A DNA stretch of 64,000 nucleotides from Salpingoeca rosetta (GCA_033442325.1 JAWQFM010000012.1:1189577-1253576), one strand, 5' to 3'. Shown: positions 25,731 to 31,700, counted from the stretch's first letter. The notes: generated from the sequence alone by a model not told the origin. Numbers and translations are program-made.

Positions 25731-28700
25731 CTATGTCATCAGGGTGAATGTCGTGGACTGCCGCAGGTGCGCGTTGTATGTCTGTCCATATGTAATGTCC
25801 ACGGTCACGTTGCGATCGGCGAGCGGAACGTAGCTCGAGTACACAAGCTGTTGCAACACTGTGTTGACGTTTGCGGTTGTCCGCGCCGTGCGGTCAACAA
25901 AGGCCGCGCTCACATCCAGTGGACCCGTGCGTGTGACCGTCACACCGGCGACTGAGACCTCACTGGATTGCATGCGTTCCGGACACGAGGTCACCAGGTC
26001 ATGCGTTGCGGTGCCGTTGAGGCTGTCGGGCGCAGTTGCAGACAGGAAGGTCGTGCCACTCAGTTCGCCGGACAGTCGCTCCGCGGCGCCAGCCAGGCTG
26101 TCTTCGCGGGCGCCAATGTACCACGCGCGCCCCTGTGTGTCCGCGAGGCGGAACGGCAGCTGCGGGCCTTCCACGCGCTGCAGTGCGCTCTGGGTGGTCG
26201 GCCTGTGCAGGGCGTACGACAGCGGCACGCGCGTGCCATCGACAAACAGGTGCACGTCCGGGAAGGCCACCAGCAGCTGCATGAGATGCCATTGGCCATC
26301 CGCAATCACAACGCCCGCAGGAAGCTCAAACACGGCCGTGACGCGCGCCACGGTTGTGTCGCTCTCCCCGGCCTTGCTGTAGTACAGGGTCACCGAGCTG
26401 TCCGGGCCATCGGAGTACAGCGCAAAGACGTGCGTGAAGTCGCTCACGCTCTTGGCCACCAGCATCCCCGCCGTGCCCGCGTCCTGCTGCACCCATGTCA
26501 CCACGCCGCCCACGTCCAACGTGGACGAGGTAGCGACCAGCGCGTCTGCAAACGAAGACGAAAGCATGGCATAGCGCCCGGATCCGCGGAAAGACACGCG
26601 CTCCACCGCCGTGTCCAGTGTCGCCCCGCCTCGGTACACCGCGTCCGTGAGCAGGGACGCCGTGTCAAAGTCGCACAGCCCCGCAGCACACGCGCGCGTC
26701 AGCTTTACGCTCAGCCGCGGTTCGTCGACGCACGGCAGCGTCGTGAGCACCGCTGTGCTTGGTACTGCATTTGCCGCGTCCACGGGCAACACCACCCGCA
26801 CTTGCTGCAGGGCATCGATGCCCTCGCCGGCTGTCGTCTGCACAAGTGCGTCCAGCGAGAACGATTGCGAGAACGTGCGTCCACTGGTCAGCGCCAGCGT
26901 GGGTGGCTCAACCTGGTCAAGAACAGCAACTGCAACCACCGCCGTCGTAGTGAACGCGCCGTCAGACACGACCACCGTCACGTTGAGCTCGGCTGCGCCC
27001 GTCTCAAAATCAAGGCGCTGCTGCAGCACAAGCCCAGTCGCGGATGCGCTGAACACGGTGTCGAGTGGCGGTGCAACGCTGAAGGCGAGCGCATCGCCGT
27101 CTGCGTCCGTGGCCGTGAACAATCCCGACAGCACCAATGGGGGTGCACTGTTCTCTGGCACATCCACGCTGTTTAACACCTGCACCACGCATGTACATGT
27201 CATCAATAAACACAACGTGGTCAGGACTTTCGTCATCACAAGGCTTGAGCATAGACGCGACAGAAACACTGGTGCACAAGTAAAGACCTGTGCATGCATT
27301 CACGCATGTATTTTTCATCGTTCCCCTCACCCTCACCGTCAACCCGACACTCATTCCCAGTACTTGACTTCCTCTTTAGCTCTTTTCCTTTCTTGCTCTT
27401 GTCCTTCTTCTCCTCTGAAATAACGCACCTGCGCAAGAGCTGGCGCGTTGTCGTTCACGTTCACAACGGTGATGTTGAGTGCAAGCGGCGCTGCAGTTTG
27501 GCCGCTGCTGTCAGTCACATTGACGAGCAGACCTCGCGGTCCAGGTGTTGGCTCGCTCGCTGAAGAGCACAAGGCGGTGTACACAAAGATGAGCGTAACG
27601 TGAGCGTTAGCACAACGGGTTGACACAGGGGGGGATGCGAAAAATAGCCGAGTGAGTGCAAGCCTCACGGTGTAATCCACGGAGTCACACCAACTCACAA
27701 CACACCACAACACACCACAACACAACACAACACAACACAACACAACACAACACAACACAACACAACACAACACAACACAACACAACACAACACAACACAA
27801 CACAACACAACACAACACAACACAACACACGCTCACCTGTGTTGACGTAGACGAGGGACGGGAGGAAGGCCATGAAAGTGCTGAGCGGAGCGGGTCCCAT
27901 GATGGTCATCACCACACGATCACCCATGATCGTCAGCGCTGTCGGAGGTCCTCGTGTCACGACCAAGCCCTCATCAACGCCATCAGGTGTCTGCTGCAGC
28001 TCAAAGGACAGCGACGTAAACTCGGTGCTGTCCACATCGACCACAGACAGCATGGCGTCGCTCAGGGGCACGGGTGCGCCCGCTGCATTGTCGCCCTCTG
28101 TAAACACCAGGCCATCCGGGCTGCGGCTGGCGATAACTGGCGGTGACTGCTGCGGTGTCAGCGCCACCGTCCACGCCGCCGTGCCGTTCCAAACGCCGTC
28201 ATACACGCGTGCCGTGAAGCCCACAGACGTGCCCTGGTGGGCGTGTTGCTTGTGCTCGTACGTGAGCGCGCTAAGCACGGCGCTGAACGCGGACAGTGAG
28301 CCGGGCCCGGAGATGTTCACCTCAAACCCTGTTGAAGACACAGCCGTCGTCACCGCCAGGCCTGCGCTGGCAGAGGCACTGGTGGGCACGCTGACGCTTT
28401 CGCCGCACGACATCAAGCACGAGAGCTGCGCAGTTGTCAGGCTGGCGTCGTGCACGGTGAGCCCGACCATGAGGCCTTGGAAGCGCGCGCACGCGGCCTG
28501 CGTCGATGCACCGCCAACGTCAAACGCACTCGCAGCGGTGGCTGTCAGCGGCTGGCGAATGGTTGGCGGGCGAACAACGCCGTCCTCCCGCACGTACGCG
28601 GCATCGAACACGCTTGAGCCCACGCGCAGCTGGGCCGTGCTGCCCCGAAGCACAAGCGCAACGTGCACCCATTCCCGCGTCGGCACGGTGGTCGGGAACA

Positions 28701-31700
28701 CCACCTGCACCTCCCTGGCACGTGCGTCAACGAACTGCAGCACCGCCTCAGTCACCGACAGGCGGAATGACAGCAGCAGCGCGTCCGAAGGTGATGGCGC
28801 TGTTTCGTCGAGCGCATTCAGCACACATTGCGTGCTGTTGCTATCTGAGAGCCAGAGCCACGCCGTTAGCGTGAAGCGCAGCGAGCGCGGCAGTGGCAGC
28901 ACCCTGTACGCGGGCACGGTCACGGGGAACGCGTTGGGATCCTGCACCTGGCCAATCAGCGGCGTGGACAGGCCGTCGTGGCAGCGAAGGAGGCGGGCGT
29001 GCGGGGCTAGCAATGCGTCGTTGGCAGCAACATCCACCAAGCATTGGCGACCAGACACAGGCGTGGTCACGCGCACAACCGCACTCTCCAAGGGCAAGTC
29101 GCCGTCAGCATCCTCCACGCTCAGGCCGCTGTCCACAAGCACGGGCCCGCTACCCTCCACATACTCGGAGACGAGTGCAGGGGTCAGCACCACCTCGGGT
29201 GCGTTGTCGTTCACGTTCTGCACCTGCAGGTCGATGAACGTCGCGTCTTGGAACTGGCCGTCCGACACAGTCGCGCTGATGCTGACAAACGAGGCAGTTT
29301 CAAAATCGAGTGCGCTGTTGAGGGTCAGCACACCGTCTGCATCAATGGAGAGCGGCGTGGACGGGCTGAGCGAGAACTGCAGCGTGGAGAACGCGGCCGT
29401 CGCATCACCATCAAACGCCTCCACTTTGCCCACCACGGAGCCCACAGCGGCATCCTCGTCCACCGTGATGCTCAGGAAATCCGTGAACACGCTGGGGAAG
29501 TTGTCGTTGACATCCAGCACGCTGATGGCAATGGGACCAACGGTGGTGGAGAGCGCGGGTGACCCACCGTCCTGTGCAGTCAGGTTGAATGATAGGGAGG
29601 CAACCGTCTCCCGGTCCACGCTCGCAGACAACACGACCGCTGTCATGGCCGAGTTGATGGAGACGTACTGCTGCGATTCCGAGTCGGCTTGAAGCGTCAC
29701 AGCGACCTGGTTGTCGCTGCAGCTGGTGGCCAGCGGTGACACGCACGCGTCCGCGTCGCTCACGCCGAACGACACGAGCACCGTGCCCACTGCAGACCCT
29801 TCTTGCACTTGGCCGCTCTGTGGTACGGCAATCACGGGTGCGTTGTCGTTGACCAGGGTCACTTGCACGCGCGCCAGGGCGTCGTTGCTCCACTCGGCGC
29901 CATCGTACACGCGAACGGACAGCGCACGCGTTGCGCTCGCTGCTGGTTCATCGGCAGAGTTCTTGTAGGCCATGGTCTGCAGGGCGGAAGTCATCTCTGC
30001 AGCGGACAGCGGCGCTGTGGACACATCCCACGTCCACGTGGCCGTGCTGCCGTTGACACTCACGCTGGGTTGCACGGTCACCAATGATGACTCGACCGAC
30101 AACTCATCCAGCGCTCCGTCCAGTGCGTTCGTGATGACCACCTGTGTTGTGTTGTGGTGTGGTGTGCACGTGTAGTGAGCGTTGCTTGAGTGTCATGCGG
30201 TGGTGCATGTTGTGTGTTGTGCGTTACAGGGGTGCAAGCAAGGTGGTCATTCTCGTGCAAAATGACATGCGTGTGTGTGTGTGTGTGTGTGTGTGTGTGT
30301 GTGTGTGTGTGTGTGTGTGTGTGTGTGTGTGTGTGTGTGTGTGTGTGTGTGTGTGTGTGTGTGTGTGTGTGTGTGTGTGTGTGTGTGCGTATGTTGGGGG
30401 GTCTCCGCACGATCGCTTGGGCAGAACAAGGAGCGACAATTGCCAACAACACGACAGAAACACCATCCCCGCCTGTGAGACAATATACCTGTATGATGGA
30501 CGCAGTGGAGCCAGCCGTCTCATCGTCCGTGTACGTGGCAGCGGGCGTAACGAAAACAGGTGCTGCAGCCCCCTCCGTAAACGTGACAATCAGGTTGTTG
30601 TCCACGCCAGATGCACCAGCACCGTTCAGATCAAGCGTCGGCGCCGTGTTGTCCACAACGTACACGCCAGCCGTGGCGGTGTTGCTTGTGAACCTGAATA
30701 GCACACCACACACACGCCGGGCGGGGGGGGGGATCAAGTTGTGAGGAGGAGTTTGGGTTACCGAGGGTGTCACAACCAACAGCCTTTGTTTGGTCACAGC
30801 AGCGGCCAAAAACATTCACGACACTTGTGGCGGCAGCACATATCACAGAAAGACAACTATCACTGACACTCAAAACGACGGTGCAGGTCGCAACGCATCG
30901 TCACTTACAAGCCATCGAACACGTCAACGGAGAGGGTTGCGACAGGCGTTGCCGTTGGTGGCTGGAAATCGCTCCAGTACCGAATGCCCTGTGTGTGTGT
31001 GTGTGAGACTTGAAACTCAACACCGCTGCAGCGCGATGTGGGAAGCCTTATGTGTCTGGCCGACGGGGACGCAACAGGACCCCCATCAAGGTAGGTTGAT
31101 TATAATATTCTTACATTATTATTTTATTATGTTAATTGTCGCATAGTTTGCGAGGATCAAAGGATACAGATCTATAGGGAGTTAGAATAGTTTATATACC
31201 TCTCATAATTGTTATGTAAGTCCGTGTGGTAGGTATTAACTGTACTCGCACATAACAACATAGTATGCCACTACCAGATCATCTGTACTGATGATATTTA
31301 GAGCAGGCAGCGAGTTTCTTCCNNNNNNNNNNNNNNNNNNNNNNNNNNNNNNNNNNNNNNNNNNNNNNNNNNNNNNNNNNNNNNNNNNNNNNNNNNNNNN
31401 NNNNNNNNNNNNNNNNNNNNNNACACACACACACACACACACACACACACACACACACACACACACACACACACGCACACACACACACATACACACACGC
31501 ACACACACACACACACACACACACACACAAACTCACCAGGAGTGCTTGCGTGTAGGTGGCAATGGAGGCAGAGCCAGAAAGCGTAATCTGGGTTGTGGTT
31601 GCATCAATGCTGGCTCGTGTTGCGGTGATGCCAGAGTTGGAATCGACATCCACGCGGATGCCTTGGTGACAAGCACCAAGACAGCGCGCAAGTGCAGTCG

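What the first reader, a model, noticed from the sequence alone, without database searches (positions are those of the whole stretch)
27837..29830. A complete calsyntenin-like ectodomain cassette (EC-EC-LamG inserted in a beta-sandwich, then a C-repeat) inside a probable choanoflagellate protein
Seen, in order: two EC repeats; [21 protein letters not shown]...[16 protein letters not shown]...LLRC; a LamG (FTLTAWL...EWVHVALV...[11 protein letters not shown]); [13 protein letters not shown]...NISG...[10 protein letters not shown]; then another FTEG repeat. Known (from recall): calsyntenin/alcadein has EC1-EC2, IEYEPGTG...KGC...RLC, an LNS domain ending FRGNLAGLTLR...IDCLYTCKEGL, then ...LTLEG...MQHISY and a C-terminal domain of the same repeat type. 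The same EC-EC-module order recurs at ~51500-53900. Inference: the ectodomain of this animal synaptic organiser may have been carved from a pre-metazoan giant repeat protein.
Basis: partly seen in the sequence, partly recalled or inferred. Interest (0 to 1): 0.85.

Follow-up and report, generated by a model that had tools for sequence, protein, structure and literature searches.

The report
Calsyntenin-like cassette in giant choanoflagellate cadherin
One stretch of a huge secreted adhesion protein in a single-celled relative of animals has the same domain order as the outer part of the animal synaptic protein calsyntenin, and weak but repeated evidence suggests shared ancestry.

Summary
Exon window:27688-30141(-) encodes two cadherin (EC) repeats. 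These are followed by a ~120-aa cadherin-like "C-repeat" split by a nested LamG domain, then a complete C-repeat. The same five-part unit recurs colinearly at 51534-54065. At least five LamG-in-repeat modules sit in one ~30-kb gene of roughly 8,500 aa (estimated), probably secreted.

The calsyntenin interpretation is partly supported:
- Pfam CLSTN_C is the only family that recurs on the C-repeats. It scores 38 bits on a neighbouring exon, with single repeats at 14-23 bits.
- Two separate CLSTN_C regions (10-60 and 165-247) match C-repeat C-terminal halves. This gives the order LamG, half repeat, full repeat.
- A good AlphaFold model of a sister module has calsyntenin clusters as its three nearest ESM-Atlas folds (TM 0.50).
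- A language-model feature search also ranks calsyntenins high.

Against it:
- A module profile did not surface calsyntenins among its top hits in 1.84 billion proteins.
- The cassette itself gets no CLSTN_C hit.
- The pre-LamG half was not matched.
- No transmembrane segment or tail follows.

It is not a calsyntenin orthologue. No tool gave me a calsyntenin sequence, so the decisive comparison is outstanding. Other first-stage notes flag similar cassettes elsewhere in this genome; I did not check them.

The parts
29872..30141 (-). C-terminal half of an ordinary C-repeat. Its N-half ([11 protein letters not shown]...) lies in the upstream exon near 30400-30640.
   Evidence: The C-repeat HMM hit E5 residues 1-84 at E 7.8e-22.
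29500..29850 (-). EC repeat a (NDNAPVIA ... VDRET ... DVNDNFP)
   Evidence: Pfam Cadherin; phmmer to CELSR1 and protocadherin chains
29203..29499 (-). EC repeat b (VDEDAAVG ... DGD ... LDFE ... NVNDNAPE)
   Evidence: Pfam Cadherin best stretch at residues 224-296; PDB alignments
28978..29190 (-). N-terminal half of the split C-repeat ([33 protein letters not shown]...), followed by a Cys-containing linker running to about 28894
   Evidence: An HMM of 14 uninterrupted repeats matched at positions 6-57, E 8e-6
28423..28893 (-). LamG / LNS domain nested in the repeat (FTLTAWL ... EWVHVALV ... [11 protein letters not shown])
   Evidence: Pfam Laminin_G_3 at residues 417-573, 29.3 bits against a cutoff of 27.6. 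The module profile hits TSP1-N at E 2e-4 and neurexin LNS at E 3e-3 in the PDB.
28138..28422 (-). C-x3-C-G-E motif ([12 protein letters not shown]), then the C-terminal half of the split C-repeat ([25 protein letters not shown]...)
   Evidence: Repeat HMM positions 50-103, E 5e-7. The Cys motif is conserved across modules in alignments A3 and A5.
27838..28131 (-). Complete C-repeat ([10 protein letters not shown] ... LVYVNT). It is finished after an intron in a small exon at about 27432-27565 (SEPTPGPRG...NDNAP).
   Evidence: C-repeat HMM E 1.8e-26; tblastn of P0001; frames shown
25734..27179 (-). Last exon: one EC, then a second-type split-repeat/LamG module (25734-26933), then the stop codon. 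No hydrophobic segment is present.
   Evidence: tblastn of P0001 residues 825-1318, E 4e-103. Module HMM E 2.4e-64. AF2 pLDDT 79.9.
51534..54065 (-). Second copy of the whole cassette: C-half, EC, EC, split repeat with LamG (51966-53213), full C-repeat
   Evidence: Colinear BLASTP, E 2e-14; alignments A1 and A5
40108..40443 (-). The uninterrupted C-repeat that gives the best CLSTN_C match in the genome
   Evidence: Pfam CLSTN_C positions 10-58, 23.3 bits for the single repeat. The exon total is 38.2 bits, E 1.1e-9. It is the only CLSTN_C hit in the 55-Mb genome.
31600..32995 (-). A further split-repeat/LamG module spread over small exons (...[19 protein letters not shown] ... [11 protein letters not shown] ... 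[17 protein letters not shown])
   Evidence: Module HMM E 4e-5 on ORF 32321-32995; sequences

Best explanation
The segment is one cassette of a single giant, probably secreted cadherin-superfamily protein. The organism has a 55-Mb genome consistent with the choanoflagellate Salpingoeca rosetta; that name is my recall, not a tool result. The gene lies on the minus strand from about 55650 (an ATG followed by a signal-peptide-like [13 protein letters not shown]) to a stop near 25734. I estimate roughly 8,500 aa.

The protein alternates runs of canonical Ca2+-binding EC repeats with runs of a ~120-aa cadherin-like 'C-repeat' (F-x-E-G ... D-x-D-S ... Y-x-N-x-x-x-E-P ... R). At five or more places a LamG domain is nested in the loop at about C-repeat position 50. 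It is bracketed by conserved cysteines, with C-x3-C-G-E-x-L on the exit side.

Shown:
- the flagged cassette is EC-EC-[N-half / LamG / C-half]-C-repeat;
- the cassette is duplicated as a unit within the gene;
- it is conserved in relatives.

Inferred mechanism: EC and C-repeats form a rod, stiffened by calcium at the EC-EC junctions. Each nested LamG projects sideways as a ligand-binding head, most likely for glycan or protein ligands, as in the related thrombospondin-N/NELL-type and neurexin-type LamG domains.

Inferred ancestry: the composite module plus the following repeat is homologous to the calsyntenin ectodomain core (two cadherin domains, an LNS domain, then the membrane-proximal CLSTN_C region). 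On this reading the architecture predates animals. The gene is not a calsyntenin orthologue.
For: Anatomy:
- Pfam Cadherin and Laminin_G_3 on the exon.
- The split repeat was shown by an independent HMM.
- The same split occurs in other giant proteins, P0008 and P0150.
- The cassette is duplicated colinearly.
- An orthologue is 48% identical.
- The gene's continuation and stop were mapped.

Calsyntenin link:
- CLSTN_C is the only Pfam family hit by more than one of 19 repeat pieces.
- Single repeats score 23.3, 15.8 and 14.3 bits, always with the repeat's C-half on CLSTN_C 10-60.
- The neighbouring exon totals 38.2 bits, above the 27-bit cutoff.
- Another repeat, P0008:6285-6425, matches CLSTN_C 165-247 at E 1.6e-4.
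- The control search rang in 0 of 14 genomes, and this gene holds the only hit in its own genome.
- The AF2 model of the exon-7 module (pLDDT 79.9) has three calsyntenin clusters as its top ESM-Atlas rows. They score TM 0.50 with 246-256 aligned residues, against 208 for NELL1.
- In the feature search calsyntenin clusters are ranks 2, 3, 4 and 8. They share the most features of any row, 154-170 of 256; one calsyntenin cluster again shared the most features (161) for the sister module.
Against: - The cassette itself gives no CLSTN_C hit at E<1.
- The HMMER module profile returned 163 hits at E<=1e-3 in 1.84e9 proteins. I Pfam-scanned ten of the broad-coverage hits and none carried CLSTN_C.
- All single-repeat CLSTN_C scores are below Pfam's gathering cutoff.
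- TM 0.50 is only marginally above a bacterial Laminin_G_3 protein at 0.49.
- The atlas alignments to calsyntenin start at query residue 49, so the pre-LamG half-repeat was not matched.
- The N-half alone gives no calsyntenin signal in the feature search.
- The closest solved LamG structures are NEL/NELL and the thrombospondin-1 N-domain, not a calsyntenin. None was found in the PDB copy.
- No transmembrane helix or kinesin-binding tail follows the cassette.
- Only 5 RNA-seq reads fell on the exon across three runs.
Confidence: 0.58

Rival explanations
1. Independent assembly from common parts. EC repeats, LamG domains and cadherin-like beta-sandwich repeats are widespread extracellular modules. 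The choanoflagellate cassette and calsyntenin would then share only superfamily-level domain homology. The LamG nesting and the domain order would have arisen separately.
For: - The module profile did not surface calsyntenins.
- CLSTN_C hits are sub-threshold per repeat and appear in only about 5 of roughly 60 repeats scanned.
- The structural margin over generic LamG proteins is small.
- The N-half was not matched.
- The nearest solved LamGs are of the thrombospondin-N/NELL type.
Against: - CLSTN_C is the only Pfam family these repeats recur on; no Cadherin_3/4/5 or Big_9 hit reached E<=0.1.
- The hits fall in two model regions, in the order and spacing expected for a half repeat followed by a full repeat directly after the LNS domain.
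- A lone C-terminal half repeat at the start of CLSTN_C cannot fold without complementary strands.
- Calsyntenins top two independent neighbour searches run on two different modules.
Confidence: 0.3
2. Bacterial-type adhesin modules acquired by a choanoflagellate. The C-repeat and the Laminin_G_3-type LamG would come from bacterial giant adhesins. Any resemblance to calsyntenin would reflect that common bacterial-type pool rather than direct descent.
For: - Most of the 150 profile hits listed match only the LamG region, and those I Pfam-scanned are Laminin_G_3 proteins, some with bacterial-type domains.
- The C-repeat HMM hits repeats in P0088, a protein that carries Big_9, Cadherin_5 and Cadherin_4 domains.
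- Feature-search neighbours include bacterial Laminin_G_3 clusters.
Against: - The window's repeats hit no bacterial cadherin-like Pfam model.
- The gene has spliceosomal-type introns and canonical animal-type EC repeats.
- The full composite module was found only in cadherin-containing relatives.
- This reading does not exclude calsyntenin homology.
Confidence: 0.1

Closest known systems
Calsyntenin / alcadein (CLSTN1-3; Pfam Cadherin + Laminin_G_3 + CLSTN_C PF19699)
   Same: - Two cadherin repeats come directly before a single LamG/LNS domain (architecture as described in PMC9064300).
- The post-LamG segment and a later segment both resemble the C-terminal half of the C-repeat (CLSTN_C 10-60 and 165-247).
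- Calsyntenins are the top structural neighbours and rank high in the feature search.
- From my own recall of human CLSTN1, not checked with any tool, the motifs EYEPGTG, FTxSVW, HYSLY, EEWHH...FPxxTLYVDG, FxGxLAGL and C-x3-C-K-E-G-L line up with the module consensus.
   Different: - The cassette is internal to a protein of roughly 8,500 aa and is repeated, whereas calsyntenin is a ~950-aa type I membrane protein.
- No transmembrane segment or kinesin-light-chain-binding tail is present.
- The cassette itself gets no CLSTN_C hit.
- Homology of the pre-LamG half is unverified.
Thrombospondin-N-type LamG domains (thrombospondin-1 N-domain, NEL/NELL, collagen IX NC4)
   Same: These are the best solved-structure matches for the LamG core. 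Foldseek gives 2.6e-10 for NEL and 1e-8 for TSP1-N. The profile E-value to TSP1-N is 2e-4.
   Different: Those domains are N-terminal and stand alone, not nested in a beta-sandwich repeat. They align over fewer residues than calsyntenin models do (208 against about 250).
Choanoflagellate and early-animal giant cadherins with mixed ectodomains (reviewed in PMC10084454, section 3.2)
   Same: Many EC repeats are combined with LamG and other extracellular domains in a unicellular relative of animals.
   Different: I found no description in the searchable literature of the nested LamG-in-repeat module or of its link to CLSTN_C.
Bacterial cadherin-like repeats (Pfam Cadherin_4, Cadherin_5, Big_9) and chondroitin-sulfate-proteoglycan (CSPG) repeats (Cadherin_3)
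   Same: The size is similar (~100-120 aa) and so is the F/Y-x-E-G ... D-x-D start. The C-repeat HMM finds repeats in a protein that carries these domains.
   Different: The window's repeats do not reach these Pfam models.

Membership tests
Calsyntenin (orthologue-level membership) | Two cadherin domains immediately followed by one LNS/LamG domain | tested here: met
   Pfam finds two Cadherin repeats, then Laminin_G_3, in exon 27688-30141(-). The reference architecture is from PMC9064300. In this protein the pair is not N-terminal.
Calsyntenin (orthologue-level membership) | Pfam CLSTN_C match above the gathering score after the LamG | tested here: not met
   There is no CLSTN_C hit at E<1 on the cassette. 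The gene reaches 38.2 bits only on another exon made of uninterrupted repeats. Only model positions 10-60 and 165-247 are ever matched.
Calsyntenin (orthologue-level membership) | Type I transmembrane segment and cytoplasmic tail with kinesin-light-chain-binding motifs | tested here: not met
   The reading frame runs from the cassette into an EC repeat, another LamG module and a stop, with no hydrophobic stretch. No match was seen to the C-terminal part of CLSTN_C. No dedicated transmembrane predictor was available.
Calsyntenin-like composite module (domain-level homology) | LamG nested in a cadherin-like sandwich, with the repeat resuming at the same point after the LamG | tested here: inconclusive
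   On the choanoflagellate side this is shown. On the calsyntenin side, CLSTN_C begins about 10 positions before the point that aligns to repeat position ~50. The pre-LNS half could not be examined because no calsyntenin sequence or structure was obtainable.
Cadherin superfamily | EC repeats with Ca2+-binding motifs (DRE, DxD, DxNDN) | tested here: met
   Pfam Cadherin E 4e-12. CELSR1 E 4e-50, with the motifs aligned. The whole gene gives E-values down to 2.9e-134.
LamG / LNS (concanavalin-A-like) | Profile match above cutoff, and a jelly-roll fold | tested here: met
Laminin_G_3 scores 29.3 bits against a cutoff of 27.6. The sister-module model has a core pLDDT above 90 and Foldseek probability 1.00 to LamG domains.
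Bacterial cadherin-like repeats (Cadherin_4/5, Big_9) | Pfam match of the C-repeat | tested here: not met
   None of the 52 repeat pieces scanned reached these models at E<=0.1; the only showing in any later slice was Big_9 at E 0.23. The only other link is indirect, through P0088.

The most novel reading that the evidence does not exclude
The calsyntenin ectodomain arose when a single cassette was excised from a giant pre-animal cadherin of this family and fused to a transmembrane segment and kinesin-binding tail. That cassette is EC-EC, a cadherin-like repeat with a nested LamG, then one more repeat. If so, the choanoflagellate gene preserves the ancestral context of an animal synaptic organiser, and the LamG-in-repeat module is a shared derived feature of choanoflagellates plus animals.
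Probability: 0.4. Interest if true: 0.7.

Novelty: new variant of a known kind. Interest (0 to 1): 0.55.

Why it matters
Calsyntenins are conserved animal neuronal adhesion and cargo-adaptor proteins. Their ectodomain beyond the two cadherin domains and the LNS domain is poorly described.

If the cassette is homologous, three things follow:
- The membrane-proximal CLSTN_C region becomes a half repeat plus a full cadherin-like repeat, which predicts that the LNS domain is a nested insertion.
- The architecture dates to before animals.
- A tractable unicellular system becomes available for asking what ligand such a LamG head binds.

It would also add a concrete case to the idea that compact animal cadherins arose by domain loss from giant ancestral cadherins (PMC10084454).

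Tried and rejected
Sequence searches:
- phmmer of the post-EC part against PDB sequences found nothing.
- phmmer of the CLSTN_C-like repeat against the PDB gave only spurious hits.
- The search for homologous proteins with the module found only the orthologue fragment P0001.
- The same tool with alignment A3 found only P0017 and one marginal hit.
- That tool's need for shared words, and its E<=10 ceiling, make calsyntenins unreachable through it.
- Ig_CLSTN (PF28399), which the Atlas lists for calsyntenins, is absent from the local Pfam copy.

Models and alignments:
- The first AlphaFold model, E5 residues 311-768 with 13 alignment rows, had pLDDT 46.5. I did not use it for fold searches.
- Alignment A4, with half repeats added as fragments, was misaligned and discarded.

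Other checks:
- The feature search with the N-half alone gave noise-level hits at 0.81.
- The post-LamG halves of six modules gave no CLSTN_C hit.
- A whole-genome profile search found only the three modules already seen in this window.
- Cluster look-ups gave no names or taxa for the relatives.
The part beside it showed only 5 RNA reads.

Rejected reading: a chance ORF or pseudogene. Against it are the 818 open codons, the 48%-identical orthologue and the conserved domain boundaries.

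
Full report
**Where and what.** Window:27688-30141(-) is a single open frame of 818 codons. Its last ~50 codons are a read-through of a 15-nt intronic microsatellite.

Pfam finds two Cadherin repeats (E 4e-12) and Laminin_G_3 at residues 417-573, scoring 29.3 bits against a cutoff of 27.6. The EC part matches CELSR1 and protocadherin chains, with E-values down to 4e-50. 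The genome is 55.4 Mb in 68 contigs. That fits Salpingoeca rosetta, but the name is my recall and no tool named the organism.

**The gene.** Long minus-strand frames run from about 54 kb down to 25.7 kb. They carry dozens of Cadherin repeats, further Laminin_G_3 domains and a WAP domain.

- An environmental orthologue fragment, P0001, is 48% identical over 787 columns.
- tblastn of P0001 shows that the gene continues after the cassette. First comes a small exon at about 27432-27565, then a last exon at 25734-27179 holding an EC repeat and another LamG module, then a stop.
- A probable start is the ATG at 55650, followed by [13 protein letters not shown].
- No hydrophobic anchor is visible at the C-terminus, so the product is probably secreted. 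This rests on inspection only.
- Neighbouring genes are an AAA/ankyrin protein and an NIF-type phosphatase.

**The repeat and the split.** I built an HMM from 14 uninterrupted ~120-aa C-repeats of this gene, none of them the split one. Against the flagged module it matched in two pieces:

| HMM positions | E5 residues | E-value |
|---|---|---|
| 6-57 | 323-378 | 8e-6 |
| 50-103 | 582-636 | 5e-7 |

The LamG lies between the two pieces, so it is nested in a loop of the repeat.

The same split is seen in other giant proteins (P0008 twice; in P0150 the repeat HMM matched the post-LamG half). In alignments of 13 and 56 sequences the N-half, a cysteine pair, the LamG, a C-x3-C-G-E-x-L motif and the C-half all line up.

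This gene holds at least five such modules:
- 51966-53213;
- 46866-48953, with two LamG domains;
- 31600-32995;
- 28135-29190, the flagged one;
- 25734-26933.

The whole unit of C-half, EC, EC, module and C-repeat aligns colinearly with its copy at 51534-54065 at E 2e-14.

**Link to calsyntenin: evidence for.**

*(a) Pfam.*
- Exon 38329-42333(-), made of uninterrupted C-repeats, scores 38.2 bits (E 1.1e-9) on CLSTN_C, above the 27-bit cutoff.
- It is the only CLSTN_C hit in the genome, and the 14-genome control found none.
- Scanned singly, three repeats hit CLSTN_C at 23.3, 15.8 and 14.3 bits. Each time the repeat's C-terminal half lies on model positions 10-60.
- P0001 gives 17 bits.
- One repeat of P0008 matches a different region of the model, 165-247, at 21.2 bits, E 1.6e-4.
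- No other Pfam family recurs on these repeats. In particular none of the bacterial cadherin-like models does.
- The two CLSTN_C regions lie about 155-160 positions apart, roughly one repeat period.
- The first begins about 10 positions into the model. That aligns with repeat position ~50, which is where the repeat resumes after the LamG in the choanoflagellate modules.
- This fits calsyntenin having the order LamG, C-half, full repeat, the same as the cassette.

*(b) Structure.*
- The sister module at 25734-26933, folded with 56 alignment rows, gave pLDDT 79.9 and pTM 0.79.
- Its top three ESM-Atlas rows are all calsyntenin clusters. They score TM 0.50 with 246-256 residues aligned over query residues 49-400.
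- Lower rows align fewer residues: NELL1 reaches TM 0.46 with 208 aligned, and a bacterial Laminin_G_3 protein reaches 0.49 with 237.

*(c) Feature search.*
- For the flagged module, calsyntenin clusters are ranks 2, 3, 4 and 8, at 0.86-0.88.
- They share the most features of any row, 154-170 of 256.
- For the sister module, calsyntenin is rank 7 but again shares the most features, 161.
- The tool itself rates scores in this range as leads only.

**Link to calsyntenin: evidence against.**
- The cassette itself has no CLSTN_C hit.
- A 4-sequence module profile searched against 1.84e9 proteins gave 163 hits at E<=1e-3. These were mostly LamG-only matches to Laminin_G_3 proteins, plus a handful of cadherin proteins carrying the full module. 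None of the ten broad-coverage hits I scanned carried CLSTN_C.
- All single-repeat CLSTN_C scores are below the gathering cutoff.
- The structural margin over generic LamG proteins is small.
- The atlas alignments start at query residue 49, so the N-half strands were not matched.
- The N-half alone gives noise in the feature search.
- Among solved structures the LamG is closest to NEL/NELL, the thrombospondin-1 N-domain and collagen IX NC4. No calsyntenin ectodomain appeared in the PDB copy.
- From memory, the human CLSTN1 sequence shows matching motifs through the N-half, the LamG, the C-x3-C motif and the C-half. That is recall, not evidence.

**Membership.** The gene is not a calsyntenin:
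- it is giant and repetitive;
- the cassette is internal;
- there is no transmembrane segment or tail;
- CLSTN_C is never matched beyond the two repeat-like regions.

The defensible claim is domain-level. A cassette with the calsyntenin ectodomain order exists in a unicellular relative of animals, and its repeat type is specifically related to the calsyntenin membrane-proximal region.

**Function (inferred).** The protein is probably a Ca2+-stiffened extracellular rod, with LamG heads displayed laterally on repeat loops as ligand-binding sites.

Expression looks very low in the three RNA-seq runs sampled. Five reads fell on 27830-30195, with about a quarter of each run read.

**Novelty.** Full-text searches found no paper linking calsyntenin to choanoflagellates or describing this nested module. 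Reviews do note that choanoflagellate cadherins carry LamG and other domains. Other first-stage notes of this scan flag calsyntenin-like cassettes in this gene and on other pieces of the genome. I did not check the other pieces.

**Verdict.** I put the probability at about 0.58 that the composite module and the following repeat share ancestry with the calsyntenin ectodomain as a unit. Interest is moderate at 0.55.

Noticed in passing
window 50154-50279 (-): A WAP four-disulfide-core domain (Pfam E 1.7e-4, 22.2 bits against a cutoff of 20.8) lies between cadherin-type repeats of the same giant protein.
   Followed up: partly
window 46866-48953 (-): This module variant has two LamG domains in tandem between the repeat halves (residues ~1826-1941 and ~2100-2290 of exon 45750-54065). 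Each is followed by a C-x3-C motif.
   Followed up: partly
P0063 (267 aa, environmental fragment): A relative in which the LamG, the C-x3-C motif and the C-half are followed within about 25 residues by a 20-residue hydrophobic stretch and a basic stop-transfer-like RQRRAGRR. This is a membrane-anchored, more calsyntenin-like layout. The source organism is unknown.
   Followed up: no
window 27716-27829, and introns near 30200-30400, 31300-31600, 33000-33280 and 54150-54360: The introns are filled with TG/CA-type microsatellites that read as CVCV or LCCVV in frame. Translations of about 31300-31400 read as a run of X, consistent with an N-run (assembly gap) inside the gene.
   Followed up: no
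window about 52020-52055 and 51150-51180 (-): Poly-glutamine runs of 9-12 residues lie inside extracellular repeat halves of exon 45750-54065.
   Followed up: no
window 23075-25024 (-) and 56658-58655 (-): The flanking genes are an ankyrin + AAA ATPase protein (E 1.1e-12) and an NIF/CTD-phosphatase-like protein (E 2.5e-11).
   Followed up: no
window 27830-30195: Three 2026 RNA-seq runs of the same species label gave only 5 reads on this exon, so the gene is barely expressed under those conditions. Run X1 holds the stretch as one near-identical contig and may be DNA, or the assembly's own source.
   Followed up: partly
window 10543-16470 (-): Three long open frames of 595, 538 and 904 aa have no Pfam match at E<=0.01.
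   Followed up: no
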